Part shown: piece after piece, positions 193 through 56,430 of the stretch
Layout: every line of letters begins with the position of its first letter
Numbering within the stretch: position 1 is the first letter of the stretch
Origin: Podarcis tiliguerta
Taxonomy: Eukaryota
Reading direction: 5' to 3' (one strand)
DNA: 64,000 nt
Assembly (NCBI GenBank): GCA_965153285.1
Contig: OZ229116.1
Program-made: the position numbers and the translations under genes
The notes under the pieces: model-generated
What the model was told of the DNA's origin: nothing
The model's input: the letters and a program-made list of their open reading frames with translations, nothing else
The model's database searches: none

Positions 193-1842
193 ATGAGATG
201 TATTTTTTAGGTGTTTCGGTGCCCACTGGTGGTTGTTTTTACCCAGAAGTCCAGCAGCTGGATTTATAGGTTGGCACATTAAGCTCAACAGATGCCTTTA
301 ACTTGGTGCTTTGGCTTGTCTTAAGTGGTTAAGAACTATACCGTAACAAACGTTGGACTAAAGGGTGAAGGGTGGTGTTTGATGATACTATCAGGATGTC
401 TAGATAATCAGTTCTGAAGATAGCTGGCTCAGAAACTTTCACATGCTGCTACTGCAGTGCTTGAAAATAGACTGTTAATGCACTGTTCTAACACATACTT
501 AAAACTGTGTGGTGGGAGGGATAATGCTTGATATCAAGTGCTGAATTGGAATTATGGGGGTGAAACTAGCCATAAGGTTTGAGAATGCATAGCTAGGCTT
601 TCGATCAATCTGGTAATGGGTTCTCTTTTTAAAAAAATCAATAAATCAGAATAAAAAGAACAAGCTGCATTTTGTGGCAGCCATAAGGGGAAACTTTAAG
701 AGAGCTGGATAAAAATAATGTCTAAGTCATGCTAAGAACAGCATTTTTATAGGTGTATGGAGCAAAACAAGGAGGAAAATATAAAAAGAATTACCCAAAC
801 AGTCCTATTTCAGGGAATGAGATAGTCTTGGTTTTTCCAGGTGTTTCAGCAGGTATGCGTGAAGATCATTCCCAGGGAGTTTGTTAGGGCCTGAGAGTGA
901 TATTCAGAACATGCCTGATGTATTTCTGTCTGTACCCTGAGCTGGCATTCCATTGGGCAGGGTGACTGGCTTTCCTGCTTAACATATTCTCTCATTTCAG
1001 TCATTTTTAATATGTATAAACTCCCTTTCCAAGGCAACACACAAAGCATGCGTATACACACAGAGAGAGAGTTTAACAACCAAAATCTTGAAATAAGAAT
1101 TTCTCAACTTTGTTGTCAAGACTGATTCTAATTCAGCAAAACCCACAGCGTCATTTGTCAGGGGGACAATCGGCTGCATTCTTAGCAGAATATTTTTGGC
1201 AATGTGTAAAATCAGAATGTTTAACCTCGACTGGATTATGCCCAAAGTTTGCCAGCACTGTTCTTTCCCGGCAATTATATTTGAAACAAATGACTATTGT
1301 TTCTTTGTTTAAAACTCCTCTGTTTGTTGCCATTGTTCTTTCAACAGCTAGTTTATATGGCTCCCATTTGGGCTGTTGAGAGGTCTCTGCCTTAGCTTTA
1401 TCTATCACTTTTGGTTCCGCTCTCCTCTTCTCAGAGCCTTGTGAGGAGGGAAACAGTTGCCATAAACCACCTCTGAGGTAAACATGGAACTTTAGTCAAA
1501 AGGCTATTTAAAGCAATTTTTAAAAAGGTTTTATATAGTTCCTCTTGCTGCAGAAGCGACATAAACAACCTCAGTATCTAGATATATGCAAAATAATGAG
1601 CAGAGATATGGAACCTATCTCATAACCCAGCTCAGACCAGCCTTCTGATTTAACCACTGGACACATTCATGCCAAATAAACATAGTGAGTGTTCATTTCA
1701 GTACACTTAAGTGTGATGTTCTTGGCTAAGTAAGTAATAACGTCACCATGGATGCAAGTTAAGAGTCAAAGTTACTATGCTTCCTAAATGCACTATATTT
1801 TATTACACATTTTACATTTCAGCCATGGTAAATGCAACTTGA

Positions 1843-2218
1843 GGGGCGTGTGTGGCGCTGTGGTCTAAACCACTGAGCCTCTTGGGCTTGCCGATCGGAA
1901 GGTTGGCGGTTCGAATCCCCGCGACAGGGTGAGCTCCCGTTGCTCTGTCCCAGCTCTTGCCAACCTAACAGTTTGAAAGCATGCCAATGCAAGTAGATAA
2001 ATAGGTACCACTGCGGTGGGAAGGTACCGTCATGCGCTCTGGTTTCCGTCATGGTGTTCTGTTGCACCAGAAGAGGTTTAGTCATGCTGGCCACATGACC
2101 TGGAAAGCTGTCTGTGGACAAATGCCAGCTCCCCTGGCCTGAAAGCAAGATGAGCGCCACAACCCCATAGTCGCCTTTGACTGGACTGGTTAAGTCCAGG
2201 GGTCCTTTCCCTTTACCT
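1843..2218 (+). mobile_element. Sauria SINE
   Basis: tRNA-like head with GGTTCGAATCC B box and ACCTTT-type tail. TSD TAAATGCAACTTGA. Confidence 0.93.
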
Positions 2219-2835: not shown

Positions 2836-3040
2836 NNNNNNNNNNNNNNNNNNNNNNNNNNNNNNNNNNNNNNNNNNNNNNNNNNNNNNNNNNNNNNNNN
2901 NNNNNNNNNNNNNNNNNNNNNNNNNNNNNNNNNNNNNNNNNNNNNNNNNNNNNNNNNNNNNNNNNNNNNNNNNNNNNNNNNNNNNNNNNNNNNNNNNNNN
3001 NNNNNNNNNNNNNNNNNNNNNNNNNNNNNNNNNNNNNNNN
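2836..3040. other. Assembly gap (205 N)
   Basis: Run of N. Confidence 1.
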
Positions 3041-7900: not shown

Positions 7901-8142
7901 CAGTGGTACCTCGGGTTAAGAACTTAATTCGTTCTGGAGGTCCTTTCTTAACCTGAAACTGTTCTTAACATGAAGCACCACTTTAGCTAATGGGGCCTCC
8001 TGCTGCCGCCGTGCAGCTGCTGCACGATTTCTGTTCTCATCCTTAAGCAAAGTTCTTAACCTGAGGTACTATTTCTGGGTTAGCGGAGTCTGTAACCTGA
8101 AGCGTCTGTAACCTGAAGCGTATGTAACCCGAGATACCACTG
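7901..8142. mobile_element. Tigger/pogo-like MITE (CAGTGGTACCTC family)
   Basis: TIR CAGTGGTACCTCGGGTTA. Same family as nine other copies in the window. Confidence 0.9.
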
Positions 8143-9034
8143 CATAATAATAACATCAGTAAAGACATCTGCATTTCCAAAACACCCCCCCCCCCAAAAA
8201 AGAGCGCATGTGAGTTGGGAGCAGGGCTTGGCACTGTGATCCTCCCCCCTCCTCACGCTCATTCACCGTATGCGCCATAAATGTATAAAGCGTGCTAAAG
8301 CCACTTCCCCAAGGCCACTGAGTGAATTCATGGCTGAGGTGAGATTCAAAAAACCACAGACTTCCTGGCTCACAGTTCATTCTCTTTAACTCTCTGCTGT
8401 ACTATGTACGTACTAAATTAAAGCAGGATGTTAACCTGCTATATATATATATATCCACACACACACAAACACACACATCCCTCCACCCCTCCTAATTCAT
8501 TCATCTCCCAGGTGTTCAGAAAAGCAGAGGTTGCTAGGTATTCTCATCATGCCCTATCTCAAGGTATTGATCAGTTCCTGCAATCTCGGCCTTATCTGTT
8601 TGCTCAGCAACGAATCTCTTTCATTCACACCAGCGACACACAGGAACTGAATGGATCCTACAGTACAGAAAGACATCAGTCGGCTATTTAACCCCCCCCC
8701 CCGCTTTTTTTTGAATCCTCTTCATTTGAATCCTCTTTGGTTTCCATAAGAGGGACGTGCCTGCTTTGCTTGACATCAGAAACCATTCCCACCCCCCCAT
8801 TGTGTCTGTGGGATGGTTACAATATGAAAGATGTTAACTGTAGGACAACGTAGTCATACACTGAACCAGGTGGGGATGCATTTCTTTTCGTGGCAGAATG
8901 TATGCAGAAAAAAGAGGGGGGGTGAGGACAGAGCACAATAGGGGAAGAGGAAGCAAAGAGGTGCTGCCCTAGAAACATGCATTGTACCAAATTTGATGGC
9001 CTTCTGGTCTCAGACACAGTGTGTCCCATTGGTA

Positions 9035-9391
9035 AAAGGTAAAGGTAAAGGGACCCCTGACCATTAGGTCCAGTCGTGACCGACTCTGGGGTTGCGGCGC
9101 TCATCTTGCTTTATTGGCCGAGGGAGCCGGCGTACAGCTTCCGAGTCATGTGGCCAGCATGACTAAGCCGCTTCTGGTGAACCAGAGCAGTGCACAGAAA
9201 CACCGTTTACCTTCCCGCCGGAGTGGTACCTATTTATCTACTTGCACTTTGACGTGCTTTCGAACTGCTAGGTTGGCAGGAGCAGGGACTGAGCAACGGG
9301 AGTTCACCCCGTTGCGGGGATTCGAACCGCCGACCTTCTGATTGGCAAGTCCTAGGCTCTGTGGTTTAACCCACAGCGCCACCCGCGTCCC
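9035..9391 (-). mobile_element. Sauria SINE
   Basis: Full length. TSD TGTCCCATTGGTA. Confidence 0.95.
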
Positions 9392-9841
9392 TGTCCCATT
9401 GGTAGCTTGCTAAGAAAAGCCTTCGAGAATGGCCCACCTTTGAGTATACATCCTTCTTCTTCTGTAATTGCCAGTTCTCCATCCCTCCATTAACTGATCT
9501 TTTCGAAATAGAAATAAAATAATAATAGTAATAATAATAATACTGATGGTTCCAGGCATTGAATCAGGGTCTCTCTTGCGCGCAGAAGGCTTGCAGGTTC
9601 AACCTCTGACTTCTTTTATTTCTCATTTTTGTTAAAACAAACAAAACAAACAAAAAGGGGACCAGATAGTAGACAATGGAGAAAAAATCAGTGCCCAAGA
9701 CCCTGATGAGCTGCTATCAATCACCTGCTAAGGCAACTTTCTATGTCCCTCTAGTTTAAATTCAAGCCCTATTCCCTACCAGTTGTTTGTAGTGAGAAAA
9801 ACATTGGATCTCCAAGGGACCTGTATGTGTGGTTTAAAATA

Positions 9842-10084
9842 CAGTGGTACCTCGGGTTACATACGCTTCAGGTTTACATATGCTTCAGGTTACAGACTCC
9901 GCTAACCCAGAAATAGTACCTCGAGTTAAGAACTTTGCTTCAGGATGAGAACAGAAATCGTGCTCCGGTGGCATGGAAGCAGCAGGAGGCCCCATTAGCT
10001 AAAGTGGTGCTTCAGGTTAAGAACAGTTTCAGGTTAAGAGCAGACCTCCGGAACAAATTAAGTACTTAACCCGAGGTACCACTG
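9842..10084. mobile_element. Tigger/pogo-like MITE
   Basis: TIRs and TA TSD. Confidence 0.92.
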
Positions 10085-12674: not shown

Positions 12675-12962
12675 TATTTGTTTCCCCCTAATGCTCATTA
12701 TGTTCTGAGTTTATGAACCACAGAGCAACCTCATGCCTTTCCTTCTGAAATGAAAAATAATCCTAACTTACTGAAACAAGTGAGGGAAATGTGTACTGGT
12801 CATAGACACGTCATTTGCAAATCTAGATATGTGTCTTCTGCTTCCCCGCTAATCATATGATCTCATAAAACTACAAAGTTCCCCACGGTTAGGTGCTGTC
12901 CCCAGAGAAACAACAAGAACATCTAAGAGAATGGCTGTTTCTAGTGTTACCCTATGTTAAAG

Positions 12963-13321
12963 GTAAAGGTAAAGGTAAAGGGACTCCTGACCATTAGGTC
13001 CAGTCGTGGCCGACTCTGTGGTTGCGGCGCTCATCTCGCTTTATTGGCCGAGGGAGCCGGCATACAGCTTCCGGGTCATGTGGCCAGCATGACTAAGCCA
13101 CTTCTGGTGAAACAGAGCAGCACACCGAAACGCCGTTTACCTTCCCGCCAGAGCAGTACCTATTTATCTACTTGCACTTTGATGTGCTTTCGAACTGCTA
13201 GGTTGGCAGGAGCAGGGACCGAGCAATGGGAGCTCACCCCGTCGCGGGGATTCGAACCACTGACCTTCTGATTGGCAAGTGCTAGGCTCTGTGGTTTAAC
13301 CCACAGCGCCACCCGCATCCC
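12963..13321 (-). mobile_element. Sauria SINE
   Basis: Full length. TSD TACCCTATGTTAAAG. Confidence 0.95.
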
Positions 13322-14051: not shown

Positions 14052-14290
14052 AAGAATTTGGACTTGATACCCCACCTTTCACTCCCCGTAAGGAGTCTCA
14101 AAGTGGCTAACAATCTCCTTTCCTTTCCTTCCCTACAACAAACACTCTGTGATGTGTGTGAGGCTGAGAGACTTCAGAGAAGTGTGACTTGCCCAAGGTC
14201 ACCCAGCAGCTGCATGTGGAGGAGCGGGGAAGCGAACCCAGTTCACCAGATTACGAGTCCACTGCTCTTAACCACTACACCACACTGGCT
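14052..14290 (-). mobile_element. tRNA-derived SINE with L2-like tail (Squam3-like)
   Basis: Reverse complement of the AGCCAGTGTGGTGTAGTGGTTAAGAGC family seen at 15255 and 38770. Confidence 0.85.
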
Positions 14291-15254
14291 AATAGTTGTT
14301 TGTACTGACTCTTTAGTTCAACTGGTAGGGAACCTACCGTGGATGGTCAGAGCTGTAGCAGCTGAGCAACACTTGAAGGGTCATAGGTCTCCAGCCCTGT
14401 TGTGCCCAGTTTTGGTAAATCAGTTTAGCATGAATGAAAGGCCAGCGGAGGCATCAGCTCAGTGCTCAGTATAGAGAGCTTGCAAGGATTTGTTAAAATG
14501 ATGCAACAGCTGTTCCCTTGTGATTTTTTCCCAGTTAGATTAACATCCTTCCACTACTGATTATCTGACTATATTTCCTGTTGGGAGGATGCAAAAAAAA
14601 GAAAAAAAAGAAAGAAAAGAAATGTACCAGAGACTAATGTCTATATGTATGTTTTATAGCTCTCTTCGTCGGAGGATCGCAGGGCAGTTTACGGCATAAA
14701 AACACAAAAATTCATAATGACAAACAAAACATTACCCACTTTAAAAGGCCATTGATTGCTTAATTAGCCAAAAGCCTGGGAGAAGAGGGATGTTTTCGCC
14801 TGGCAGTTATCTGCTGCTGCTTGTCTCCCCTTCTTCTTTTTCTTCTGAGTGTCTGCTAACCCACATGTTTATAACAGCAAAAGTCGCACCATGGATGATT
14901 TAGCAAGGCAGAATGGGGTGAGTGTTTGTTTTAGAGAAGCACAGCAGCTGCATTTAGAAAGTACGTATTGCCTAGGGAGATAATTGGTGCGATACTTGGT
15001 TACTAAATTGGGCCCACGCAGGGATTTCACCAAATGCAAATGAGACAATGCACAATACGTATGAGTCAATGTGTGTCCTCTATGCTTTCAATGTTCAGGG
15101 GTGGAAGGTGGCTGGTGATGGAGCTGACCTTTCAAAGCAACACATTTGAAAACCACATTGTTATGATCACCAGAAGTTCCTGAGGGGCTCTTCTGAGAGA
15201 CGGGCTAGGACATTGCCTTGCTTAGATGTGTTGCTGCAGTGTGCAGCCTTTCTT

Positions 15255-15506
15255 GAGAGCCAGTGTGGTGTAGTGGTTAAGAACGGTGGATTTGTAATGT
15301 GGGGAACCGGGTTCGCGTCTCCACTCCTCCACATGCAGCTGCTGGGTGACCTTGGGCCAGTCACACTTCTCTGAGGTCTCTCAGCCTCACTCACCTCACA
15401 GAGTGTTTGTTGTGGGGGAGGAAGGGAAAGGAGAATGTTAGCCGCTTTGAGACTCCTTTGGGTAGTGTTAAAGCGGGATATGAAACCCAAACTCTTCTTC
15501 TTCTTC
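15255..15506 (+). mobile_element. tRNA-derived SINE (Squam3-like)
   Basis: A box TGGTGTAGTGG, B-box-like GGTTCGCGTC, (CTT)n tail. Confidence 0.85.
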
Positions 15507-24267: not shown

Positions 24268-24485
24268 CAGTGGTACCTCTGGTTATGAACTTAATTCATT
24301 CCAGAGGTCCGTTCTTAAGCTGAAACCGTTCTTAACCTGAGATACCACTTTAGCTAATGGGGCCTCCTGCTGCCGCCACACCACCGGAACACGATTTATG
24401 TTCTCATCCTGAAGCAAAGTTCTTAACACGAGGTACTACTTCCGGGTTAGCGGAGTCTGTAACCCAAAGTGTTTGTAACCCAGGT
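24268..24485. mobile_element. Tigger/pogo-like MITE lacking its terminal bases
   Basis: One intact TIR with TA. The other end is cut at aacccaggt. Confidence 0.85.
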
Positions 24486-24675
24486 CGGAGGAGCACCGGA
24501 AATAGCTTGTGCGCATGCTCGTTATTTCCAGTGCACATCCGGGGCAGAAGAGGCCCATGCACATGCACACAGGCTATTTCCGGTGCTCCTCCGACTCGGA
24601 AGGGCATGCGCTCCCCCGCCGTGTGATTGGCGCTGGAGACACCGGTCCAAGGCGTAGTAAGTTTGCTGACCCCTG
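24484..24675. mobile_element. One end of a hAT-Charlie-like element with an internal inverted repeat
   Basis: Ends GTTTGCTGACCCCTG. Internal arms gtcggaggagcaccggaaatagc / gctatttccggtgctcctccgac. Confidence 0.65.
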
Positions 24676-24683
24676 AATTAGAA

Positions 24684-24941
24684 CATGGGTAGGCAAACTA
24701 AAGCCAGGGGGTCAGATCTGGCCCAATCGCCTTCTAAATCTGGCCCGCGGACGGTCCAGGAATCAGCATGTTTTTACATGAGTAGAATGTGTGCTTTTAT
24801 TTAAAATGCATCTCTGGGTTATTTGTGGGGCATAGGAATTTGTTCATTTCCCCCCCCCCAAAAAAAAAATATAGTCTGGCCCCCCACAAGGTCTGAGGTA
24901 CGGTGGGCTGGCCCACAGCTGAAAAGGGTTGCTGACCCCCG
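24684..24941 (+). mobile_element. hAT-Charlie-like MITE
   Basis: Ends CATGGGTAGGCAAAC / GGTTGCTGACCCCCG. TSD AATTAGAA/AGTTAGAA (7/8). Confidence 0.85.
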
Positions 24942-25444
24942 AGTTAGAACGTACAGGCATCTGGAAGTGAATCCACGAAGAGGTTATCTCTAATCTGCTC
25001 TGTTCCTAAGTGGCAGGTGGGGAAAGATCAATCAGGGTTTCAAATTACCCTTTCCAATTAGGTTGGCACATAAGGCAAACCGCAGGTTACAAGGTTAAGC
25101 AGGTACAGAACAGGCAAGATTATGCGGCTAAGTGCTAGCTCAGACAGAGCTCCAACAAGCGCCACACCCTCTGTACTTTCCTTTTGAAGTTCAGGGTAGG
25201 CATCAGCTATTTGCATAGCAAGCGTCTGGAATCCTGGGCAATCAGGTGCGCACTCCTTCAAGTGCAGGGGTTTGTTTGTGCCACCACTTGGAGATGAGGG
25301 TGGAGTGAGAGCCAGCTTGCTATCAGACATGCTGCACTAAATAATAAGCACTTATTTAGGTCTTACCTGTTGAGGAAGGCTCTTTGGTGACAGGAGGTAC
25401 CTCTGGAATTCCAGCCCGTGGGGTGCTTCCCTAGGATCAGGAGA

Positions 25445-25720
25445 ATAAAAACGTCTTCAGCTGATGCCAGAAGGACAACAGTGTTAATGCCAGGTAGGCC
25501 TCTTTGGGGAAAGGAATTCCACAAATGGGGCACCACCACTGAGAAGGCCCTGTCTCTGATCACCTCACCTCATCTCAGATGGGAGGGTCACATGGAAGAG
25601 AGTTTCTGAAGAGGACCTTGGCACATCTGTAGGTTGGTACAGGAGCAGGCATCCTAAGGGTACCTGGGTCCTAAGCCGTATAGGACTTTAAACAGAAGCA
25701 TCAGCTCATTGAATTTTGCT
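25445..25720 (-). mobile_element. L2 LINE 3' fragment
   Basis: The minus-strand translation RAFSVVVPHLWNSFP matches the L2/CR1 RT C-terminal RAFS..P.LWN.LP motif. Confidence 0.7.
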
Positions 25721-26826
25721 GGATCATGAGTGATAGGTTCCTACTGACACGGGTGCCTGCCTTATTATTCCTCGTTGGATCTGTGGATCCTTCTAACTCA
25801 GTATTGTCTCCATTGACTGGCAATGGCTTTTCAGAGTTTCATACAGGATCTTTCCCAAGCCCTACTTTGGAAAATGCCAGGCACTGAACCTGGGACCTTT
25901 TGCAAGCTAAGCACATGCTCTATGACCACTGAGCCTGAAGGAAGCACCACAGAACAAATATTCTGGCTGCAATCTTAAATTTGCTCACAAGGGCGTAGGC
26001 CTCTTTGAATTCAGCGGGACTTGCTCCTGGTTGCTTAGGGTAGCACTGTCAAATGCTCGTGTTCACGTACATGTAATGACTAGTTTTTGTTCTTGTGAAT
26101 TTATTCTGTTTTCCAGCTACATTAATTAATCAGAAGGAAGCCTGTCTAAAGCTTACAGGGTTGTAGTTGGCTGATTGTGCTTCTTCTTGTTGTTGTTTTA
26201 AGAAGCAAAGGATAACAAATGTCTTTGCAGTGAAACTAAAATTGCATTTGTAGGCTTAAAACCTGCATACAACCAATCCAAATAGTAAGGTGTGTGGAGG
26301 TATCGCTGTGCCTGATGCAACAGCCTGGTCATTCAGCTGTTTCACTCCAGGCTATATAATTGTCAGAACAAATTTGGGGGATGCTCACGAGCCAAGTGAG
26401 CAACTTTGCTTTTCCACGGAGGTTGCACCAGTAACTTGGCAGGATTTGATGTTAAAAGATGTAAGATTAAAAGTGCATTTGCCCCCTTGAAGCCAAAGGA
26501 GCAGCACAGGCCACAAGCTAAATAATTAAATAGTAAAGCTTCAGATGTAGATTGTGCCAGTTTTTAAGGGATGGGGAGAGTAGGAAGGATGAATATATTA
26601 ATAATGAGCACGTATTTAGTTCATATGATATTTATATAGTTCTATAGAGCATCCAAAGCACTTCACATACATTTCGCACAATCCTCAGAATATTGTTGTT
26701 GTTGTAGGTTAGGCTCAGAGATGGTGACTGGCCCAAGGTTATCCAGTGAGCTTCGTGGCTGAACCCTGGTCTCCCAGGTCATTGTCCAACAGCTTAACTT
26801 TTACACCACACTATGAATTAGGTTGA

Positions 26827-27176
26827 GGGACGCGGGTGGCGCTGTGGGTTAAACCACAGAGCCTAGGACTTGCCGATCAGAAGGTCGGCGGTTCGAATCC
26901 CTGCGACGGGGTGAGCTCCCGTTGCTTGGTCCCTGCTCCTGCCAATCTAGCAGTTCGAAAGCACGTCAAAGTGCAAGTGGATAAATAGGTACCGCTCCAG
27001 CGGGAAGGTAAACGGCGTTTCCGTGCGCTGCTCTGGTTCGCCAGAAGCAGCTTAGTCATGCTGGCCACATGACCTGGAAGCTGTACACCGGCTCCCTTGG
27101 CCAATGAAGCAAGATGAGTGCAGCAACCCCAGAATCGGCCACAACTAGACCTAAAGGTCAGAGGTCCCTTTACCTT
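26827..27176 (+). mobile_element. Sauria SINE
   Basis: Full length. TSD TATGAATTAGGTTG. Confidence 0.95.
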
Positions 27177-27246
27177 TATGAATTAGGTTGGTGCTTTTAT
27201 CCCCATATTACAGAAGTGAGGTGGGGAATGCTGAGGCCAAGAGATA

Positions 27247-27603
27247 AAGGTAAAGGTACCCCTGCCCGTACGGGCCAGTCTTGACAGACTCTAGGGTTGT
27301 GCGCCCATCTCACTCAAGAGGCCGGGGGCCAGCGCTGTCTGGAGACACTTCCGGGTCACGTGGCCAGTGTGACATCGCTGCTCTGGCGAGCCAGAGCCGC
27401 ACACGGAAACGCCGTTTACCTTCCCGCTAGTAAGCGGTCCCTATTTATCTACTTGCACCCGGAGGTGCTTTCGAACTGCTAGGTTGGCAGGCGCTGGGAC
27501 CGAACAACGGGAGCGCACCCCGCCGCGGGGATTCGAACTGCCGACCTTTCGATCGGCAAGCCCTAGGCACTGAGGCTTTTACCCACAGCGCCACCTGCGT
27601 CCC
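27247..27603 (-). mobile_element. Sauria SINE, second subfamily
   Basis: Full length. TSD GAGGCCAAGAGATA. Confidence 0.95.
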
Positions 27604-27659
27604 GAGGCCAAGAGATAGTGGCTAGCAAATTCTTCATAGCTCCTAAGATGATACGTTTA

Positions 27660-27735
27660 TATTCCTGCATTGCTGGGGGTTGGACTACATGATGCTTGGG
27701 GTCCCTTCCAACTCTACTATTCTATGATTCTATGA
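27660..27735 (+). mobile_element. CR1-type 3' tail
   Basis: gtcccttccaactctactattctatgattctatga, with (ATTCTATG) terminal repeats. Confidence 0.75.
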
Positions 27736-27938
27736 ACCAGGGGTTTTCTAGGTTGCACTGAACCGTAAGGCACCATGCCTAACATATAACATACCACAGC
27801 TTCAGAAAATTTGGAAATACATCATACAAAAAATACATGTCTGCCCTACAATATATATTTACAACCAACCAGCCAATTAACTAACCAACCAACCAACCAA
27901 CCGTCTTAGTGTTTCAGTTAGTAGAGGACAGCCTATTA

Positions 27939-28164
27939 CAGTGGTACCTCGGGTTACATACGCTTCAGGTTACAGACTCCGCTAACCCAGAAATAGTACC
28001 TTGGGTTAAGAACTTTGCTTCAGGATGAGAACAGAAATCGGGCTCCGGCAGCGCAGCTGCAACAGGAGGCCCCATTAGCTAAAGTGGTGCTGCAGGTTAA
28101 GAACAGTTTCAGGTTAAGAGCGGACCTCCGGAACGAATTAAGTACTTAACCTGAGGTACCACTG
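27939..28164. mobile_element. Tigger/pogo-like MITE
   Basis: TIRs and TA TSD. Confidence 0.92.
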
Positions 28165-33366: not shown

Positions 33367-34234
33367 TGCTGCCCATCAGACTCAGTTGCCCCAGCCACTC
33401 TGGGCAGCTCCCAACAAAACAATATTAAAAACATAATACATTACACACTGAAAACTTCCTGGCCCAGAGCATTCTAACAGAAGCTTTCAAAGAATTCAAA
33501 AATACAGCTCTGTAGAACAAAACAAATCAAAAAGTAGCAAGACCATGCAGCATCTCAAATGCAGTTACACACAATCAGAGATTCTTATTTTTTATAATTA
33601 GGCTCCTGTACGAAATTATGGAGGAAAGTGGAAGGAGACATAAGCTGTTATTCTGTCACTCACAACTAGTTCTGCCTTATTATGAAGTGAGCTAGAACCA
33701 CGTCACACGAGTTTCCTCAAAAGCTGGCATTAGCATTGTTTACTTGTGTGACTGAGTCATGCAGAGGGCAGCATAAAAGAGCAGCAAGGTGAGTAGCTGC
33801 TCTCCGCCAAGCCTTGGGAAGACTTGCCAGCTTTTCATTCAGTGCAGTGTGGCTGAAGAGGATATCCTGTTGGACCAGTGATAACAAGGGAAATAAAATC
33901 ACTTCCTCACCAGCTGTTTGATTCAGGTAGAGAGAGAAAGAGAAAAAAGGAAGTCGACTTCCTCTGGGTGTGCACTCTGCCCACCACCCCCTCACTCATT
34001 AATGCAAAGTGCAGCACCAGAGAAACCACTCACTCCCCTATTTTATATGCAGCACAGATCAATAACAGAGCACTGAACTAGAGCAAATAGGAAGTTCTGG
34101 GTCTTCGCTGCATAGGAGCTGCATTTTAGTCCATGGCAGCCAATGGTACAGAACAGGGTGCTGACACTGATCTATTGTAGTGCTGCCTGTCTGTGGCATA
34201 GTGTGGGTTGCCACTGCCCAGCGCAAGGAAAATA

Positions 34235-34763
34235 TCGCATTTACTTGAATCTAATGCACACCTCAAGGGGACACGGGTGGCGCTGTGGGTTAAACCACAG
34301 AGCCTAGGACTTGCTGATCAGAATGTTGGTGGTTCGAATCCCCGTGACGGGGTGAGCTCCCGTTGCTCGGTCCCTGCTCCTGCCAACCTAGCAGTTTGAA
34401 AGCACGTCAAAGTGCAAGTACATAAATAGGTGCCGCTCCAGCGGGAAGGTAAACGGCATTTCCGTGCACTGCTCTGGTTCGCCAGAAGCGGCTTAGTCTT
34501 GCTGGCCACATGACCCGGCAGCTGTACGCCGGCTCCCTCGGCCAATAAAGCGAGATGAGCACCACCACCCCGGAGTCGGTTACGACTGGACCTAATGGTC
34601 AGGGGTCCCTTTACCTTTAATGTGCACCTCAATTTGCAAAACCTTGAAGCCAAAAGAGTATTTGCTGGCGAATGTAAATGTGCCATCAAATCGAATGTGC
34701 ACCCTAATTTCCAATACGTAATTTGGCCAAAAAGAGGTGTGCATTACATTCGAGTGAATACGG
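34235..34763. mobile_element. TcMar-Tc2-like MITE, interrupted by a Sauria SINE
   Basis: Inverted ends TCGCATTTACTTGAATCTAATGCACACC / GGTGTGCATTACATTCGAGTGAATACGG with TA flanks. Confidence 0.7.
34268..34618 (+). mobile_element. Sauria SINE (nested in the Tc2-like MITE)
   Basis: Full length. Imperfect TSD TAATGCACACCTCAA/TAATGTGCACCTCAA. Confidence 0.95.
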
Positions 34764-35825
34764 TATTGCACCCCCTAAGGCAAGTATTGTGCCCTCTACA
34801 GGGTGTCTCTATTCGGCACTGCTGTTGCCAGATGTAGCAGTGGCAGGACATGCATGTGTGTCTCCTTGGGCTAGGGCACCACCATGAGTCCCGCTGTCTG
34901 CCCACCTCCCCTGCTGGTGGGGGGCACTGTGCAGCCAATGGATGCCAGGAACCGTCCTCTCCCAGCTCTTGTTTGGTGTGCTGCTCAAGTGAGGCGGGTG
35001 GGCAGGATGGGGAGAGTGCCTCCAGTTGGAGTGGCAGCTGCAGAGGTGTGCCTCTAACCAATTTTCTTTTGTGCCCGAGGCAATTGCCCCAGTAGCCCTC
35101 CTCAAGCTATGCCTCTGCTGTCTGTTCCAATCGGCAAAGGTCTTCCAAGCTTATTGCCTATTTTCAAACAGAGATGCCAGTGTTTGAACTGTATACAGAT
35201 AACATGTGCCTCTCCCTTTTTTGGCACCTCATTTAAGTGAAACTAAATCACGTGAAGATAATTGAGGATAGGGACTAATTTTAGACGCAACACCTGCCGT
35301 GTAAAACATCCCTTCCCCAAACCTGTACTGATGTAGCCCCTTCACCCTTTAAATGTGATGCTTAGCATAAGAGGGCTTCAACGGGAAACAGTTTTTTTAT
35401 GGTGGTGATGCATGAGGAAGGCACCACATCAAAATGTTCCTGTGCTTCCGAGTAAATATATTTAAGAACAGGGATGCAAATCCGTACATCAGTAAAATAC
35501 AGTCTTAAAAGCTACCATCCAAAAACCAACAGCGGCTTACAAAAAGCAGCATCTCAAATAATTAAAGGTTGGAGCTGTGGGTTTGCATACGCCTTCCAGT
35601 TGGCTCGGATTTCTCCTGTCGGGCTTAAGCAAGGCTCTCTTAACCAAGATCTGAAACCAGGATTTGAGGCTCCTTCCATAGTTAAGAGGGAACCTCATTA
35701 ATTGACCGTGACCTTAATGCCAATGTAAAACTAAGCTAGAGGCTGGTGGTGTGGAGGGCTGCTGGGAGACAGAGAAGAGGGCTGGGTCTCTCAGAACCAT
35801 GACTCAGAGCTGCATTGGTTGTATA

Positions 35826-36177
35826 AAAAAGGTAAAGGGACCCCTGACCGTTAGGTCCAGTCGTGGACGACTCTGGGGTTGCGGCGCTCATCTCGCTTTA
35901 CTGGCCGAGGGAGCAAGTGTACAGCTTCTGGGTCATGTGGCCAGCATGACTACACCGCTTCTGGCGAACCAGAGCAGAGCATGGAAACGCCATTTACCTT
36001 CCCACTGGAGCAGTACCTATTTATCTACTTGCACTTTGATGTGCTTTCGAACTGCTAGGCTGGCAGGAGCAGGGACCGAGCAACAGGAGCTCACCCCATC
36101 GCAGGGATTCGAATCACCGACTTTCTGATTGGCAAGCCCTAGGCTCTGTGGTTTAGACCACAGCGCCACCCACGTCC
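35826..36177 (-). mobile_element. Sauria SINE
   Basis: Full length. TSD TGCATTGGTTGTATA. Confidence 0.95.
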
Positions 36178-40716: not shown

Positions 40717-40852
40717 CAGGCACAGGCAAACTCGGCCCTCCAGATGTTTTGAGACTACAGTTCCCACCATCCCTGGCCACTGGTCCTGTTAGCTAGGGAT
40801 GATGGGAGTTGTAGTCCCAAAACATCTGGAGGGCCGAGTTTGCCTGTGCCTG
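40717..40852. mobile_element. Palindromic ~136-bp hAT MITE
   Basis: Near-perfect long arms. Perfect TSD GTTTATAA. Confidence 0.93.
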
Positions 40853-41105: not shown

Positions 41106-41240
41106 GATGCTTTTGTGGAGCTCTACAGCAACAACATGAGGCCTTTGTTTGATTTCTCGTGGCTGCCTCTGAAGACAATCCTGAGTCTGGCTGTTGTGGG
41201 TGCCTGCATCACCCTTGGAGCTTATCTGGGGCATAAGTGA
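41106..41240 (+). CDS. BCL2: BCL2 apoptosis regulator, terminal coding exon (end of BH2 plus C-terminal transmembrane anchor)
   Basis: After the acceptor AG, phase 0 reads [44 protein letters not shown]. This closely matches the BCL2 C-terminus (DAFVELY...[34 protein letters not shown]). Confidence 0.98.
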
Positions 41241-50170: not shown

Positions 50171-51299
50171 CTACTTCTCACTTGATTGTGGGCAGCAGGG
50201 CTTTGCAGGGGACTCTTGGGTAGGGATGGAAGAGAGATTTGATTTTTGTTTGTTTGTTTGCATTTTAATCAGAAACTACCTATTCACACTTCTCAAACCA
50301 ATATGCAACCCGAAACACAGCTTTCCTTTGAAATCTGCACATCTCCAATCAAATATGATGTGCAAAAGTGCGTATATTGGGTGTAAGTGTGCATAAAAGA
50401 GCACATGTTAAATGAAAATAACATGTACTGGGGGAAATTGCTTGCAAAAGTACTGTACATTAGTTAAAGCTACATATGAAAAAAAATGTGTTTATTAGGA
50501 TAAATTTGCACTTCAAATGCTGATGAATTTTCAATGAGGAGTTCACCAGAATCAAGTAGCTGAAAAAAACGTGGAGAACTCAATTTAAGCCTGGAAAAAT
50601 GGGAAACTTTGAGAACCAAAATGGACAGATTTGTCCATCAGTACTCTTGTGGAAGCTTGGAAAAACAGCAAGAGGCACAAGCCTAATTTGATCCACTCCC
50701 CTCCATCCCTGGGTGCCTTAGCTGAAGTTGAGTATCAGTTGGAGAAAGCTGGGAAAGAAGACTGAGAAAGAATGATTCACATATATATGACTCAAAGCAC
50801 TAAGCAGCCCAAAACATTTCTTTTTATGATTACAGGCCTTGCGCAAATCTCATGTGAGGAGCATACAGGCCACCCATTGAAACATCACCACATGGATGAC
50901 AAATTCCCCCCTCCCAAAAAACCCCCAAAATGTTCTCAAGAGATTCCATACCAGGAGTGACTGCAAATGTACAACTGGTTAGGCTTACTTATCAGATTTT
51001 GCATGGTAAGAGAAAATCCAGATTAAACAAAGTACAGGTGGGCATTTTGATGATCTTGTGTGGACACACTCAGTGGCGTAGCGTGGGTTGTCAGCACCCG
51101 GGGCAAGGCAAGTAATTTGTGCCCCCTAACCTGTGGATTTGCGCCCCCTAACCCTAACCCCCAGATGTTGCGCCCAGTGCGGCTGGCCCCCCCTGCACCC
51201 CCCACGCTACGCCACTGGATGCTCCCACTGGTGCAACCACCCTACCCCAACCTCGCTACTATCACCCTGTCCCAACGCTGTCCAAATATGGAGCAGTGA

Positions 51300-51462
51300 C
51301 AGAGGTGGATTAAGGGACGCGCAACTGGTTATCACACTAGTGAGAGGGCACTGCAGGGGGGCTGCAACAATGACTTATAATGAAAGTCGAGAGATGTGGA
51401 TGGGGGTGCCAATTTTTGTTGTGTTGCGCAGGGCGCCGTTGAAATTTGAAAGTCTGCCTCTA
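51300..51462. mobile_element. Degenerate small hAT-like MITE inside the captured segment
   Basis: Imperfect inverted ends CAGAGGTGGATT ... AGTCTGCCTCTA, with subterminal gcgcaac/gttgcgc. Confidence 0.45.
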
Positions 51463-51579
51463 GCAGACTGCGTTGTAAGGAGGTTGGCTCACCACACATG
51501 CCTTAAGAATAATGAGTCTTTTTCAGTGTGGACTAAGTAATTATAAACCAGGTCTTACCTTTCGGCAGGACCACTGTAC

Positions 51580-52274
51580 CCAACCTTCTCGGCGCTGCAG
51601 GTGAGGGTTTCTGGGGCAGAGGAGGTGCCTTGCCAGGCAACCCTAAGCCCCAGCACCTCTCCTTTCCTCGACCCTTTGCCGCCTGCCGTCTAGAAAAGGA
51701 CTCCATCCCTCTCGCTTGCTCCCGCCCGCCCCCTTCCCACAGACAGCCGCGTTTCCTTCCCGGCTCCCCGTGGGAACAAACGGCCCCTTCTCCGCCCTCC
51801 CGGCGAGGCCAGCGCTTCCTTCTCTTAGCCCCCGCCCCGTCTGCGGGAGGCCCTCCACCCTCCTGGCCACCCTCCCCGCCCCGCGCCCCTTCATAGGCAC
51901 GGCTCGTTCGGCCGCGCCGCCCCACACGCGTCCCGCCCTGCCCGCCCCGTCGAGGCGCACGCTCTCGCCCGCCGCCGGCTCCATGGATGGCGGCGGCGCT
52001 TACCGCTGCCACGCCAACCGGCACCTGGAGGGCGGCCAGTCGGCGCTGCCGGGCTCGCTGCTCTTCGCGGCCGGCCTGCTGGGCAACGTGTTGGCGCTGG
52101 GAATCCTGTGGCAGCACCAACTCCGCGCGCGGCTGCGGCGCGCCCGCGGCGCGCCCGCGGCTGGGGGCGCCCAAGGGCGTCCGCCTTCTACCTCCTTCCC
52201 TCTGGACTTGCGCCCCCCCAAATGTTGCGCCCGGTGCGGCTCGCACCCCTGGCACCCCCCACGCTACGCCACTG
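51580..52274 (+). promoter_or_regulatory. CpG island with multiple GC boxes (probable captured promoter/5'UTR)
   Basis: The only strongly GC- and CpG-rich stretch in the window. Several CCGCCC motifs lie between ~51720 and ~51975, upstream of the ATG at 51983. Confidence 0.75.
51983..52197 (+). pseudogene. PTGDR: 5' fragment of a prostanoid receptor gene, most similar to prostaglandin D2 receptor DP1 (N-terminus, TM1, ICL1, start of TM2); frameshifted and truncated
   Basis: MDGGGAYRCHANRHLEGGQSALPGSLLFAAGLLGNVLALGILW aligns with recalled human PTGDR [37 protein letters not shown]. Adding one G to the G5 run at 52163-52167 gives GGRPRASAFYLL (human SVFYML). Homology stops at the transposon right end. 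Confidence 0.85.
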
Positions 52275-53291
52275 GACACACTGAAAGAGTTCTGGACATA
52301 AGCAGCACAAAGTCCACAACAAGCTGCTGTGTGAAAGCACCCACTGCCTGCTGGCCAGCAACATCCCTAAATATAACCGCAGCAGCTACCCATGCGACAC
52401 AATCGGGCTGAGCAAAAAAATAGCATGTTAGGACATTACAAGCGTAGGAGGAGGAGAGTTTTCTATGGGAGTTACAGTGGCAGATAACCATCTCCTTTGC
52501 TAGAATATCCAGGATACCGTAAATCCAAGATCTCCTTTTAAGGCTAATTAAGAGAGTTTTTTTCATGACCCCCAGAGGTCACTAGGAATGTACAGCCAAG
52601 ACATGAAGAAGACTCACTATGTGGTGGCAAAGTTCCACACAATAAATATTGCTAGACACCAGTGAGAGCTGGCTGCAGTTTTGAGGGACACCCTTTGTGG
52701 GTCTTTGCCCTATGTTAGTGGGATACCCCCCTACACATAAGCTTGCCTGGTAGCTACAAGCCACCATCTTAAGTTCCCACATTATCCTGGAGCACTCGTA
52801 ATGTCCATCTGAGACATATGTTCCAGGAAGGACCCAGAGGAGGCATCAGCACAGGTGGGCCCTGACGCAAGGCCCAATGTCAGGGACTATTTGTTCATTT
52901 ATAAAAGTATATACCTGCCCTCTCACAAAATATCAGGCTGCTGTAAAATACCAGGTTAGTGTAAAAAAAAAAAAAGGTTTTTTGTAAAAGCTTTTACACG
53001 GCGAAGCAATTTTTTGTGGCATTCCCAGAATTATTTTAACCTTTGGTCATCAAGATCTGCCCTGAATAGCACAGAAAAGTGGTTTTCAAACACTAAGGGA
53101 GCCTTTCCCATGTCAACTTGGCTGTCGGAGGGAGACTTGCATGGACACCTCGAAAACCTTGCCATGTTGTAAAAAGTTCTTGGGCACAGTTTGGGGGCTG
53201 GCAACCCAGGACAGGACGTTCTCTGGGGCAGCCCTTAAGCTGAGGAATTCTCTCTCCACAGAGGCTCATCTGCCACCTTCATTGTTCTATA

Positions 53292-54006: not shown

Positions 54007-56078
54007 TTAACCCGCCCTGGGGCCTTAGGGTAGGTGAGACATCCAAATAATAGTAATAATGATTGCACAACAATATAACAATTAATTGATTAATTTGAAA
54101 AAAAAAGACTGCCTGGTCAGTTCTCATTGAACACTGTGCCTCCATAAATACTCCCCAGAATGCCCTTGAAAACTCCCTTGTGGCTACACACTGCCAAGGA
54201 AGTGTAATAGCAGGAGGCAATCTGAATTACAGGAAACCTTGCCAGCTATTCCTGACCTGGTCCTTCAGGAGCCTCTTATAAAGAGTCCTCTTCTTAAAAT
54301 ATTGGGGCAAAATGTCCATCTATCTACTAGTCTTGCCTGCTGAGCCTTTTAAGGAGACCCCAGGGATCAAACCTGCATGCAAACTATATGTCCTTGTCAC
54401 CGCGCCACCATTTCTCCCCAATATGAAAGCCACTTGCTTCAAACTGGTCCCCCCTTGCCACCCATCTCCTTTAATATGGAGCCCTAAGTCAACCCCATGT
54501 TATGGGAAACTCGCTGGATGCAAGGAGAATTTTGCATTTCAGCTCCCGCCAGTGTGAGCTAACTAATCCTACCAGGCAGATGATATCTCCTAATCTCAAA
54601 TCTTCCTCTGGAAGGGATTGCTTGCCTGCAAGAGCTTCCCTTCCATTTGCAGTTATGCAAAGATAGAACTGGCGATGGACCAAAGTGCTCTCTCGTGTGG
54701 CTGTAAATTAACGTTACTAGTGGAAACTGACAGGAAACTCCTGCAAATTGGGGTTTTGCTCAACATCTGGAGCCCAAACTTTTGAATTCCCTCAACGTGT
54801 ATGGATAAAGCAGGTGATGCCTATTTCTCCCTTCTTAACATCCTCTCCTCATTACTGACTTCCTCATGTCCGAGCCCTTGAATTTTACAAGGCAGGATTT
54901 CTTTACTCGTCAGTTTTCTGTGTTCACAAAAACAGCTGTTATTTCTCCAAAAAGAACTCCCCCCCCCCAAAAAAAAAACCCCACACATCCACCATGCACT
55001 TTCCATTGTATAATTCAGTTGTTAACAGAACACAAATGCTTCTCCCATCATCTTCCCTAGCAAAAGCTCTTAGACTTTAAACATTTAAACATGGCTTGAC
55101 GTGAGAAAGGTGTATATCTGACATAATTTTGTTACAACACCATAATGGAACTTGTTTTGCAACCTTAATCATCTGAATTCTCTGTCTGTTTTCCCATGTA
55201 GCCTCCGGCACACCGTCATTCGTTTGTTTAAAACAGTTACATACCACACTTCATCGTACTAGCAGTTGTACAAGCATGAAGAAATGAACAGTACAATGAA
55301 ACACAACCAGAATAAAAGCAACAGATGAAACTGACAGATAACTCCTTAACCAACAAAGCTGGCTCACAAGCCAATTAGGGCTTTGAAAGTAATATCAAAC
55401 AGCACCCCAAATGCAAACAGGTAGGGCGAACCTCTTTCAGGACTGGAATAATGTAGACAAAACCAGCTGTACCAGTCAGTTCAATGTTTGAGGGTGTATG
55501 ATTCTCTTAAGCTAAGCAGATTTCCAATGTGAACACCACCAGGTAAGATGCATAGATATTTCCAAAGAGAGTGGAATTTCAGTGTGGAAAAAAAAGAATT
55601 AACCTTATGGTGACTGGCTCATCCTTCACTATGAAATATTATTGATGTTCTCCCTTTTGCTTTTGTTATCCACTCATTTTCTTCTAATATCACATCTGTG
55701 CTAAGGATTTACAATACTGCTATTTCTTATCTTCCTCTCTTTTCACTTGCCCAACTTTCTATTGTTTGCCTATTTCCCTTGAAAACTCTGCCAAAACCAA
55801 TATTCTGGATTTTCATGTTCCTCAGCCTCTCTCAACAGAATCACTTTAACTTGTTTGGCGGGGGGTGGGGTGGGTGTTGTTCTCAAGATCAAAATATTGA
55901 GAAACTGTTTACTTCTTCTTTCCCCCCAATGTGTCCATCTGGTTGCAAAGTCCTTCCACTTTCAGCTTGTCAATATAGCAAGGAGTTTGCTCTTTTCTAT
56001 TTACAGAGACTCCCAACTTTTCAATACACAATTTTATTATTTCTCAAGTCGACTACTGCAGCATTCAGCCTCCCTGCT

Positions 56079-56430
56079 AAAGGTAAAGGTAAAGGGACCC
56101 CTGACCGTTAGGTCCAGTCGCGGGCAACTCTGGGGTTGTGGCGCTCATCTCGCTTTGCTGGCTGAGGGAGCTGGTGTACAGCTTCCAAGTCATGTGGCCA
56201 GCATGACTAAGCCGCTTCTGGCAAACCAGAGCAGCGCATGGAAACGCCATTTACTTTCCCACTGGAACGGTACCTATTTATCTACATGCACTTTGATGTG
56301 CTTTCGGACTGCTGGGTTGGCAGGAGCAGGGACCGAGCAATGGGAGCTCACCCCGTCGCTGGGATTCGAACTGCCGACCTTCTGACCGGCAAGCCCTAGG
56401 GGCTCTGTGGTTTAACCCCCAGTGCCACCC
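56079..56430 (-). mobile_element. Sauria SINE
   Basis: Near full length. Confidence 0.93.

What the first reader, a model, noticed from the sequence alone, without database searches (positions are those of the whole stretch)
51063..52282. Pack-type hAT transposon that captured the promoter and 5' coding region of a prostaglandin receptor gene (PTGDR-like) and landed beside BCL2
Seen in the sequence: a 1204-bp unit bounded by perfect 17-bp TIRs (CAGTGGCGTAGCGTGGG) and a perfect 8-bp TSD (GACACACT), with no transposase. Its interior is a CpG island running into ~70 codons of a prostanoid GPCR (YRC...GQSA.P...LFAAGLLGNVLAL...SAFYLL) that stop at the element's right end (~52198). Established: 8-bp TSDs and CAG-starting TIRs are typical of hAT elements. 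PTGDR normally lies next to PTGER2, not BCL2. Gene capture by TIR elements (Pack-MULE/Pack-TIR) is well known in plants and much less documented in vertebrates. Inference: DNA-level transduplication, since upstream promoter-like sequence is included and there is no poly(A). Intact TIR CpGs and a perfect TSD suggest it is recent.
Basis: partly seen in the sequence, partly recalled or inferred. Interest (0 to 1): 0.9.

Follow-up and report, generated by a model that had tools for sequence, protein, structure and literature searches.

The report
Lizard hAT transposon carrying PTGDR 5' end
A 1.2-kb dead cut-and-paste (hAT-type) transposon about 10 kb downstream of the lizard BCL2 gene carries a DNA copy of the promoter-like CpG island and first 68 codons of the prostaglandin D2 receptor gene; this kind of gene-fragment capture is already known in animals, and here the element's structure shows how the fragment was picked up.

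Summary
A 1204-bp unit (51071-52274) has perfect 17-bp inverted ends and a perfect 8-bp target-site duplication. It encodes no transposase.

- **Cargo.** It holds a GC-box-rich CpG island and codons 1-68 of a PTGDR (DP1) receptor, 93-95% identical to Podarcis muralis PTGDR. An 11-bp tandem duplication breaks the frame. The rest of the receptor is absent from the window.
- **Location.** The last coding exon of BCL2 lies 9.8 kb upstream on the same strand.
- **Three ends, not two.** The unit is a complete 147-bp MITE, then 980 bp of cargo starting exactly at that MITE's end, then the 3' 77 bp of a different copy of the same family. The cargo joins that partial copy in a 12-nt zone of imperfect microhomology.
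- **Best reading (inferred).** Replication or repair read through from a MITE next to PTGDR into its flank, then switched into a second MITE. This resembles abortive gap repair and maize Ac/fAc composite insertions.
- **Earlier scan notes.** The scan noted a second PTGDR-like Pack-hAT on other DNA of this genome (s1-830559, unchecked) and several other exon-1 captures.

This is a new member of a known kind (animal Pack-TIR elements).

The parts
51063..51070 (.). Left copy of the 8-bp target-site duplication, GACACACT
   Evidence: (D18)
51071..51217 (+). MITE-A: a complete 147-bp non-autonomous element with both 17-bp inverted ends (51071-51087 and 51201-51217). Its terminal CAGTG fits the hAT YARNG motif.
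   Evidence: (I1, I2); hAT criteria from PMC3014272
51218..51560 (+). Cargo part 1: 343 bp, 49% G+C, CpG o/e 0.43. It starts exactly at the outer base of MITE-A's right end. Origin unknown: either the distal upstream region of PTGDR or filler from a third locus.
   Evidence: no match elsewhere in the window; ORF without a Pfam family
51561..51982 (+). Cargo part 2: a promoter-like CpG island and presumed 5' UTR (71% G+C, CpG o/e 0.88), with eight CCGCCC boxes at 51722-51942, running into a Kozak-like CCATGG
51983..52197 (+). Cargo part 3: PTGDR (DP1) coding fragment covering parental codons 1-68 (N-terminus, TM1, first loop, first residues of TM2). It differs from P. muralis at R10H, Q52R and G55R.
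52135..52156 (+). 11-bp tandem duplication (2 x GCGGCGCGCCC) that shifts the reading frame. After it, GWGRPRASAFYLL reads in the +1 frame and is identical to the parent.
52186..52197 (+). Right breakpoint zone. These 12 nt encode FYLL of the receptor and also align 8/12 with MITE-A positions 51117-51128 (imperfect microhomology).
   Evidence: (D2)
52198..52274 (+). MITE-B fragment: the 3' 77 bp of a second copy of the same family, in direct orientation, with a perfect end at 52258-52274. It is 90% identical over 62 nt to the 3' half of MITE-A and lacks 12 bp present there.
   Evidence: (D1)
52275..52282 (.). Right copy of the 8-bp target-site duplication, GACACACT
   Evidence: (D18)
34191..35117 (+). 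Context: an older, longer member of the same family. Its ends are CpG-decayed (CTGTGGCATAGTGTGGG on the left). Its duplication is 7/8 matched (CTGCCTGT / CTGTCTGT). A tRNA-derived SINE is nested inside and the interior is unrelated.
41106..41240 (+). Context: last coding exon of BCL2 with its splice acceptor and stop codon, 9.8 kb upstream of the element on the same strand

Best explanation
What it is. This is a non-autonomous hAT-type composite ('Pack-hAT') element holding a dead DNA-level copy of the 5' end of the prostaglandin D2 receptor gene. The copy comprises upstream DNA, a GC-box CpG-island promoter, the 5' UTR and codons 1-68.

How it arose (inferred from the anatomy). A MITE of this family sat, or still sits, about 765 bp upstream of the PTGDR start codon. 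During transposase-induced repair or replication, DNA synthesis ran through that MITE (MITE-A). It passed the MITE's right end and continued for 980 bp into the PTGDR promoter and exon 1. It then switched at a short stretch of imperfect homology into the 3' part of a second MITE (MITE-B). Candidate processes are abortive gap repair with template switching, or reversed-ends transposition with re-replication as for maize Ac/fAc composite insertions. The product has a 5' end from MITE-A and a 3' end from MITE-B, so hAT transposase can treat it as one element. The 8-bp duplication of GACACACT marks its insertion, most likely as a loaded unit, 9.8 kb downstream of BCL2.

What it does. The coding fragment cannot make a receptor: it holds one transmembrane helix and is frameshifted. 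The only plausible activity is that of an orphan CpG-island promoter pointing away from BCL2.

Shown: ends, duplication, three-end architecture, identity of the cargo, absence of the rest of the gene, CpG and GC-box content.
Inferred: the donor MITE beside PTGDR, the read-through and switch, arrival as a loaded unit, any promoter activity.
For: - The ends and duplication are far beyond chance. The terminal CAGTG and 8-bp duplication fit the hAT criteria given in PMC3014272.
- The cargo is PTGDR. It is 93-95% identical to P. muralis proteins P0001-P0003 and matches named squamate PTGDR orthologues. The best solved structure is human DP1. tblastn of P0002 finds only 51983-52254 in the 64-kb window.
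- The cargo begins exactly at the last base of a complete MITE. This is the natural boundary between a MITE and its flank at a donor locus.
- The flanks of MITE-A (GACACACT / GATGCTCC) do not match, so it is not a later nested insertion.
- The two 3' MITE halves differ by 10% plus a 12-bp indel, so they come from two different copies.
- The right junction lies in a 12-nt stretch that fits both the gene and the MITE, 8/12.
- Known precedents share this architecture and its junctions. Maize composite insertions are a full Ac plus flank joined to fAc, with an 8-bp duplication and 0-3 bp microhomology (PMC4270019). Such macrotransposons excise and reinsert (PMC9910405). 67.6% of animal Pack-TIRs have microhomology at a breakpoint (PMC8277862).
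- For arrival as a loaded unit: the parent is not within the window, and multicopy transposed Pack-TIRs were always distal to their parents. Unchecked scan notes list a second PTGDR-like Pack-hAT on another piece of this genome. They also list multicopy SPR and CRPPA exon-1 Pack-hATs.
Against: - No DNA of this genome outside the window could be read. The parental locus, the predicted MITE beside it, other copies and the orthologous empty site are all untested.
- The second PTGDR-like element in the scan notes is 1779 nt, not 1204 nt. It could be an independent capture rather than a transposed sister.
- The 8/12 microhomology is imperfect and could be chance.
- The 343 bp next to MITE-A (51218-51560) may come from a third locus rather than from upstream of PTGDR.
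- Most animal Pack-TIRs described so far are single-copy products made in place.
- GACACACT does not fit the common hAT target consensus nTnnnnAn (consensus stated from my own knowledge, not checked here).
Confidence: 0.58

Rival explanations
1. Capture in place, without transposition of the cargo. A plain MITE (MITE-B) inserted here first and made the GACACACT duplication. Later it excised or broke, and the gap was repaired. The nascent strand switched from the sister chromatid to an ectopic homologous MITE next to PTGDR. It read through into the PTGDR flank and annealed back by microhomology to the remaining 3' part of MITE-B. The cargo never moved as part of a transposon.
For: This is the main route inferred for single-copy animal Pack-TIRs. 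94% of 97 primate cases had a plain TE at the orthologous site, and 67.6% had microhomology at a breakpoint (PMC8277862). It explains all three ends, the exact MITE/cargo boundary, the divergence of the two 3' halves and the junction zone equally well. It needs one event fewer than formation elsewhere followed by transposition.
Against: Gap-filling Pack-TIRs show a strong bias to parents within 15 kb (56.9%). Here no parent lies within 51 kb upstream or 11.7 kb downstream. Scan notes (unchecked) report a second PTGDR-like Pack-hAT and amplified exon-1 Pack-hATs in this genome. TE sequence is duplicated here rather than slightly lost, unlike the typical small internal gap (median 4.6% of TE size).
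Confidence: 0.3
2. Macrotransposition from the donor locus. At the PTGDR locus of some ancestor a complete MITE lay upstream of the promoter and a fractured MITE lay inside exon 1. The transposase used the outer 5' and 3' ends and moved both, with the DNA between them, to this site.
For: The architecture (full element, host DNA, fractured element in direct orientation, 8-bp duplication) is that of Ac macrotransposons, which excise and reinsert (PMC9910405).
Against: It requires a MITE fragment inside the coding exon of the donor allele, which would be a null allele. Yet P. muralis has an intact PTGDR (P0002). MITE-B meets the cargo at an internal MITE position with no end and no duplication of its own. 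So it did not insert into exon 1 as an element.
Confidence: 0.06
3. Assembly chimera. Reads from the PTGDR locus and from a plain MITE at this site were wrongly joined through the shared MITE repeat.
For: MITEs are repeats, GC-rich islands are hard to sequence, and no reads could be laid on the region.
Against: Two false joins would be needed. The second (52186-52197) lies in unique coding sequence with only 8/12 similarity to the MITE, which assemblers do not bridge. The unit is 1.2 kb, well within single long reads. A frameshifting duplication and 3 amino-acid differences from the P. muralis gene show an independently evolving copy, unless they are differences between species.
Confidence: 0.03
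4. A native or segmentally duplicated receptor locus with two independent MITE insertions at its borders.
For: None beyond the presence of receptor sequence.
Against: The same 8 bp flank the outer ends of two different MITE copies, which independent insertions would not give (chance about 1 in 65,000). The inner sides carry no duplications. Exon 1 stops at codon 68 and no further receptor sequence exists in the window. In amniotes PTGDR is a neighbour of PTGER2, not BCL2 (established knowledge). The merged PTGDR/PTGER2 gene models of P. muralis, P0001 and P0003, agree with that.
Confidence: 0.01

Closest known systems
Animal Pack-TIR elements, especially Pack-hAT (Tan et al. 2021, Nat Commun, PMC8277862), e.g. 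Pack-hAT-N8_XT carrying the CAPSL 5' UTR in Xenopus tropicalis
   Same: Non-autonomous TIR element ends and a target-site duplication enclose a DNA-level copy of a host gene fragment from the 5' end of a gene. hAT is the commonest carrier (208 of 370). Microhomology at breakpoints is common.
   Different: That survey found no Pack-TIR in its only lizard (anoCar2; supplementary file 4). Typical cases have filler inside one TE with a small gap. Here a complete MITE plus a fragment of a second copy flank the cargo, so part of the TE is present twice in two diverged versions.
Maize Ac/fAc composite insertions and macrotransposons (Zhang et al. 2014, eLife, PMC4270019; Sharma and Peterson 2022, PMC9910405)
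   Same: Same superfamily (hAT) and same layout: full element, then the host DNA that flanked it at the donor site, then an internal junction with little or no homology, then a fractured element. The whole is bounded by an 8-bp duplication and can move as one unit.
   Different: The maize cases are 10-28 kb, arose under observation from a known Ac/fAc pair, and carry flank on both sides of the junction. Here the unit is 1.2 kb and built from 147-bp MITEs. The donor configuration is unknown, and the second arm carries no flank.
Abortive gap repair / filler DNA in Ds formation, and plant Pack-MULEs (from my own knowledge: Rubin and Levy 1997; Jiang et al. 2004)
   Same: Template switching during repair of a transposon-induced break builds chimeric non-autonomous elements. 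Pack-MULEs favour GC-rich 5' gene ends.
   Different: Different superfamily for Pack-MULEs (9-10 bp duplications, long TIRs).
Other Pack-hAT notes of this scan in the same genome (SPR exon 1, CRPPA exon 1, SORCS2 exon 1; s1-821216, s1-821220, s1-830565) and a second PTGDR-like one (s1-830559)
   Same: hAT MITE ends around a CpG-island promoter plus first exon of a host gene. One follow-up reports dozens of copies in several related lizards.
   Different: Those are on other DNA, and I could not see their sequences. Whether they use the same MITE family or share junctions with this element is unknown.

Membership tests
hAT superfamily, non-autonomous element | 8-bp target-site duplication | tested here: met
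   GACACACT at 51063-51070 and 52275-52282. The older sibling has CTGCCTGT / CTGTCTGT.
hAT superfamily, non-autonomous element | Terminal motif YARNG and short terminal inverted repeats | tested here: met
   The ends start CAGTG and form a 17-bp perfect inverted repeat. The criterion is as stated in PMC3014272.
hAT superfamily, non-autonomous element | An autonomous partner with the same ends that encodes a hAT transposase | not testable with these tools
   None in the window. Element ORFs have no Pfam family. No Anolis family in PMC3014272 has this TIR.
hAT superfamily, non-autonomous element | Target consensus nTnnnnAn | tested here: inconclusive
   GACACACT does not fit and CTGCCTGT fits only at position 2. 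Two sites are too few, and family-specific patterns vary. The consensus itself is from my own knowledge.
Pack-TIR (transduplicating TIR element) | TE termini on both sides of a non-TE interior, with no transposase | tested here: met
Pack-TIR (transduplicating TIR element) | The interior derives from a host gene | tested here: met
   93-95% identity to P. muralis PTGDR over the N-terminal 53-56 residues; DP1 is the best PDB match
Pack-TIR (transduplicating TIR element) | A parental copy exists elsewhere in the same genome | not testable with these tools
   The rest of the gene is absent from the window.
Pack-TIR (transduplicating TIR element) | Multicopy with shared junctions and different duplications (transposition of the loaded element) | not testable with these tools
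   Only an unchecked scan note of a second PTGDR-like element (s1-830559)
Composite insertion / macrotransposon of the Ac/fAc type | One complete and one fractured element in direct orientation form the two ends, bounded by one 8-bp duplication | tested here: met
   MITE-A 51071-51217 is complete. MITE-B 52198-52274 is the 3' 77 bp only. They form direct repeats D1/D2.
Composite insertion / macrotransposon of the Ac/fAc type | The interior is the DNA that flanks the complete element at the donor locus | not testable with these tools
   The cargo starts at the exact end of MITE-A, as predicted, but the donor locus could not be read.
Functional PTGDR (DP1) receptor gene | Complete seven-helix open reading frame | tested here: not met
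   Only codons 1-68 are present and an 11-bp duplication shifts the frame. There is no 7tm_1 Pfam match.

The most novel reading that the evidence does not exclude
This element is one copy of an amplifying lacertid Pack-hAT system. MITEs that sit next to CpG-island promoters repeatedly pick up 'promoter plus first exon' modules (PTGDR, SPR, CRPPA, SORCS2 and others) by read-through. They scatter these modules as orphan promoters. This copy, whose CpG island is still undecayed, would be unmethylated and start a new transcript downstream of BCL2.
Probability: 0.2. Interest if true: 0.75.

Novelty: new member of a known kind. Interest (0 to 1): 0.45.

Why it matters
Gene-fragment capture by cut-and-paste transposons is well known in plants and was catalogued in animals only in 2021. 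That catalogue had no squamate case and only four multicopy cases. This element adds a clean lizard example.

Its three-ended layout preserves the steps of capture: a donor MITE, read-through into its flank, and a switch into a second MITE. It links animal Pack-TIRs to the composite insertions seen forming in maize. That gives sharp, cheap predictions for the parental locus.

If the scan's other notes hold, this genome may be a good natural system for asking why first exons with CpG-island promoters are picked up. It could also show whether the scattered islands stay active. By itself the element is most likely a neutral, decaying insertion.

Tried and rejected
There is therefore no read support, no allele test and no expression test.
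No lizard DNA outside the window could be fetched: not the parental PTGDR locus, not the orthologous BCL2-downstream sites.
- Exact look-up of nine window ORFs, including junction-spanning ones, found none in the collection.
- An exhaustive HMMER search of the 142-aa chimeric ORF found only ordinary receptors and one 73-aa fragment. There was no second chimeric ORF.
- The search of earlier findings by sequence was blank.
- Rfam on 33.5-53.5 kb found nothing.
- Pfam on the five element ORFs and two ORFs of the sibling found nothing.
- Literature searches for Podarcis or lizard hAT capture found nothing specific.
- Considered and rejected: a retrocopy (no poly(A); 765 bp upstream of the ATG are included; the borders coincide with TE ends). 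Also a nested insertion of MITE-A (its flanks GACACACT / GATGCTCC do not match), the native locus, and two independent MITE insertions.
- I did not scan metagenome or bacterial collections, since they cannot hold lizard loci.
- The species was not determined. The best protein matches point to a lacertid close to Podarcis.
Full report
**Observation.**
The sequence is as described. The 17-mer CAGTGGCGTAGCGTGGG stands at 51071-51087 on the + strand, and its reverse complement at 52258-52274. The two are 100% complementary (I2). With up to three mismatches the window holds four matches where 0.06 are expected. GACACACT directly abuts both outer ends, at 51063-51070 and 52275-52282.

As a control I scanned the whole window for inverted 11-mers within 6 kb flanked by an 8-bp direct repeat. 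Only this unit and a 136-bp MITE at 40717-40852 qualify with non-palindromic repeats. The same test with the repeat window shifted by 3-11 bases gave no hits. Five ORFs of the unit have no Pfam family, so there is no transposase.

**Anatomy.**
The unit has three transposon ends, not two. The same 17-mer occurs a third time at 51201-51217 on the - strand. So 51071-51217 is a complete 147-bp MITE, which I call MITE-A.

The right arm, about 52198-52274, is the 3' 77 bp of another copy of the same family in direct orientation (MITE-B). It is 90% identical to the 3' half of MITE-A over 62 nt and lacks 12 bp present there (D1/D2, 35). The two therefore come from different copies and are not a fresh duplication.

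Between them lie 980 bp of cargo, which begins at the very first base after MITE-A's right end. MITE-A is not a later nested insertion, because its own flanks (GACACACT and GATGCTCC) do not match.

An older, longer relative lies at 34191-35117. It has CpG-decayed ends, a 7/8 duplication, a nested tRNA-derived SINE and an unrelated interior. The family has therefore been in this genome for a long time.

**Cargo.**
- From 51561 to 52197 the DNA is 71-76% G+C with CpG observed/expected 0.88-1.04. The flanks have 0.11-0.22.
- Nine of the window's 13 GC boxes lie there, eight of them as CCGCCC between 51722 and 51942.
- From the ATG at 51983, in a CCATGG context, the sequence reads the N-terminus of a prostanoid receptor.
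- The best database matches are three Podarcis muralis proteins at 93-95% identity, followed by proteins named prostaglandin D2 receptor from many squamates.
- Among solved structures, human DP1 scores best (E 5e-7), ahead of EP2 (4e-4) and IP (0.12).
- The alignment covers parental codons 1-68: the N-terminus, TM1, the first loop and the first residues of TM2.
- An 11-bp tandem duplication (2 x GCGGCGCGCCC, 52135-52156) shifts the frame. After it the +1 frame reads GWGRPRASAFYLL, identical to the P. muralis protein.
- Apart from that, the copy differs from the P. muralis protein at R10H, Q52R and G55R.
- tblastn with P. muralis, Elgaria and Sceloporus receptors finds nothing else in the 64 kb. 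Exon 1 is cut at codon 68 and this is not the native gene.
- The first 343 bp of cargo (51218-51560; 49% G+C) match nothing in the window and no protein family. They may be the distal upstream region of PTGDR or filler from a third locus.

**Right junction.**
The 12 nt at 52186-52197 encode FYLL of the receptor. They also align 8/12 with MITE-A positions 51117-51128. The switch from gene to MITE therefore lies in a short zone of imperfect homology.

**Surroundings.**
The last coding exon of BCL2, with its splice acceptor and stop codon, is at 41106-41240 on the + strand. The element sits 9.8 kb downstream of the BCL2 stop, in the same orientation. In amniotes PTGDR is the neighbour of PTGER2, not of BCL2 (established knowledge). 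Two P. muralis gene models (P0001, P0003) merge a PTGDR N-terminus with a PTGER2 body. That is what one expects from adjacent paralogues.

**How it most likely arose.**
The exact MITE/cargo boundary on the left is the natural border between a MITE and its flank at some donor locus. The right side is a homology-poor internal junction into a truncated, diverged second MITE. Together they point to copying that started in a MITE next to PTGDR.

Three known processes give this product:
- abortive gap repair with template switching after hAT excision (from my own knowledge of Ds formation);
- fork stalling and template switching followed by transposition, proposed for multicopy animal Pack-TIRs (PMC8277862);
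- reversed-ends transposition with re-replication. In maize this yields composite insertions made of a full Ac with its flank, joined by 0-3 bp of microhomology to a fractured Ac, all within one 8-bp duplication (PMC4270019). Such structures later excise and reinsert as macrotransposons (PMC9910405).

I cannot separate these three from the window. All of them predict a MITE abutting the cargo's left end at the native PTGDR locus.

**Did it land here loaded, or was it built here?**
For arrival as a unit:
- The parent is not nearby. In-place gap filling in animals is strongly biased to parents within 15 kb, and multicopy transposed cases are always distal.
- TE sequence is duplicated rather than slightly lost.
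- Earlier notes of this scan, which I could not check, list a second PTGDR-like Pack-hAT of 1779 nt on another piece of this genome. They also list several exon-1 Pack-hATs (SPR, CRPPA, SORCS2). One of these was reported by a follow-up agent to have dozens of copies in related lizards.

For in-place capture:
- It is the rule for animal Pack-TIRs described so far.
- It needs one step fewer.
- A donor MITE beside PTGDR could seed several independent captures of different length, which would also explain a 1779-nt second element.

I put arrival as a unit near 0.58 and in-place capture near 0.30.

**Age.**
All six CpGs of the three ends, the island's CpGs and the duplication are intact, while the flanks have lost most of theirs. 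The insertion is therefore much younger than the sibling at 34 kb. It is not brand new: it carries a frameshifting duplication and three amino-acid differences from P. muralis. Those three may partly be species differences, since the species of the window is not known.

**Function.**
The fragment cannot make a receptor. The ORF from the ATG runs 142 codons through the MITE end and the duplication into the flank. It has no relatives as such. The only plausible activity is an orphan CpG-island promoter firing away from BCL2. The nearest AATAAA is at 52641. This is untested.

**Artefact?**
A misassembly would need two false joins, one of them in unique coding sequence. I rate it at 0.03. It could not be tested with reads.

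**Comparison and novelty.**
Animal Pack-TIRs are described: 370 in 100 genomes, of which 208 are on hAT elements. Only four are multicopy, and none was found in the single lizard surveyed. This is a new member of that kind, in a lineage not covered there. Its architecture ties it to maize composite insertions. No Anolis hAT family listed in PMC3014272 has this terminal sequence.

**Limits.**
The parental locus, other copies, the empty site, read support and expression therefore remain open. The assembly gap at 2836-3040 was left untouched.

Noticed in passing
window 40717-40852: A 136-bp palindromic MITE starting CAGGCACAGGC, with a perfect 8-bp duplication GTTTATAA. It lies in the last BCL2 intron, about 250 bp upstream of the last coding exon. 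It carries two inverted ACTACA..TTCCCA-type motifs that resemble the ZNF143 site (from memory), as in other notes of this scan on hairpin hAT MITEs.
   Followed up: partly
window 34191-35117: An older, longer member of the same MITE family, with CpG-decayed ends, a 7/8 duplication (CTGCCTGT / CTGTCTGT), a nested tRNA-derived SINE (about 34270-34600) and an interior unrelated to the PTGDR cargo. Two ORFs of the interior have no Pfam family.
   Followed up: partly
window 1819-2160, 12954-13271, 34318-34689, 35751-36128, 55855-56385: At least five copies of one SINE, in both orientations. They are visible as near-identical spurious ORFs (…LAGAGTEQ.ELTPS.GFE…) in the ORF list.
   Followed up: no
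proteins P0001 and P0003 (Podarcis muralis, UniRef): Public gene models named 'prostaglandin E receptor 2' are chimeras. They join a PTGDR N-terminus (53 or about 115 residues) to a PTGER2-like body. They probably merge the two adjacent paralogues, so the names mislead.
   Followed up: partly
window 7991-9994 and 24358-28074: Pairs of inverted 11-mers (TGGGGCCTCCT) next to the palindromic octamer TTAGCTAA. These are inverted copies of one repeat, not target-site duplications. A similar case lies at 14214-15334 with GCAGCTGC.
   Followed up: no
window 2836-3040: A run of 205 N (assembly gap or masked). Left as it is.
   Followed up: no
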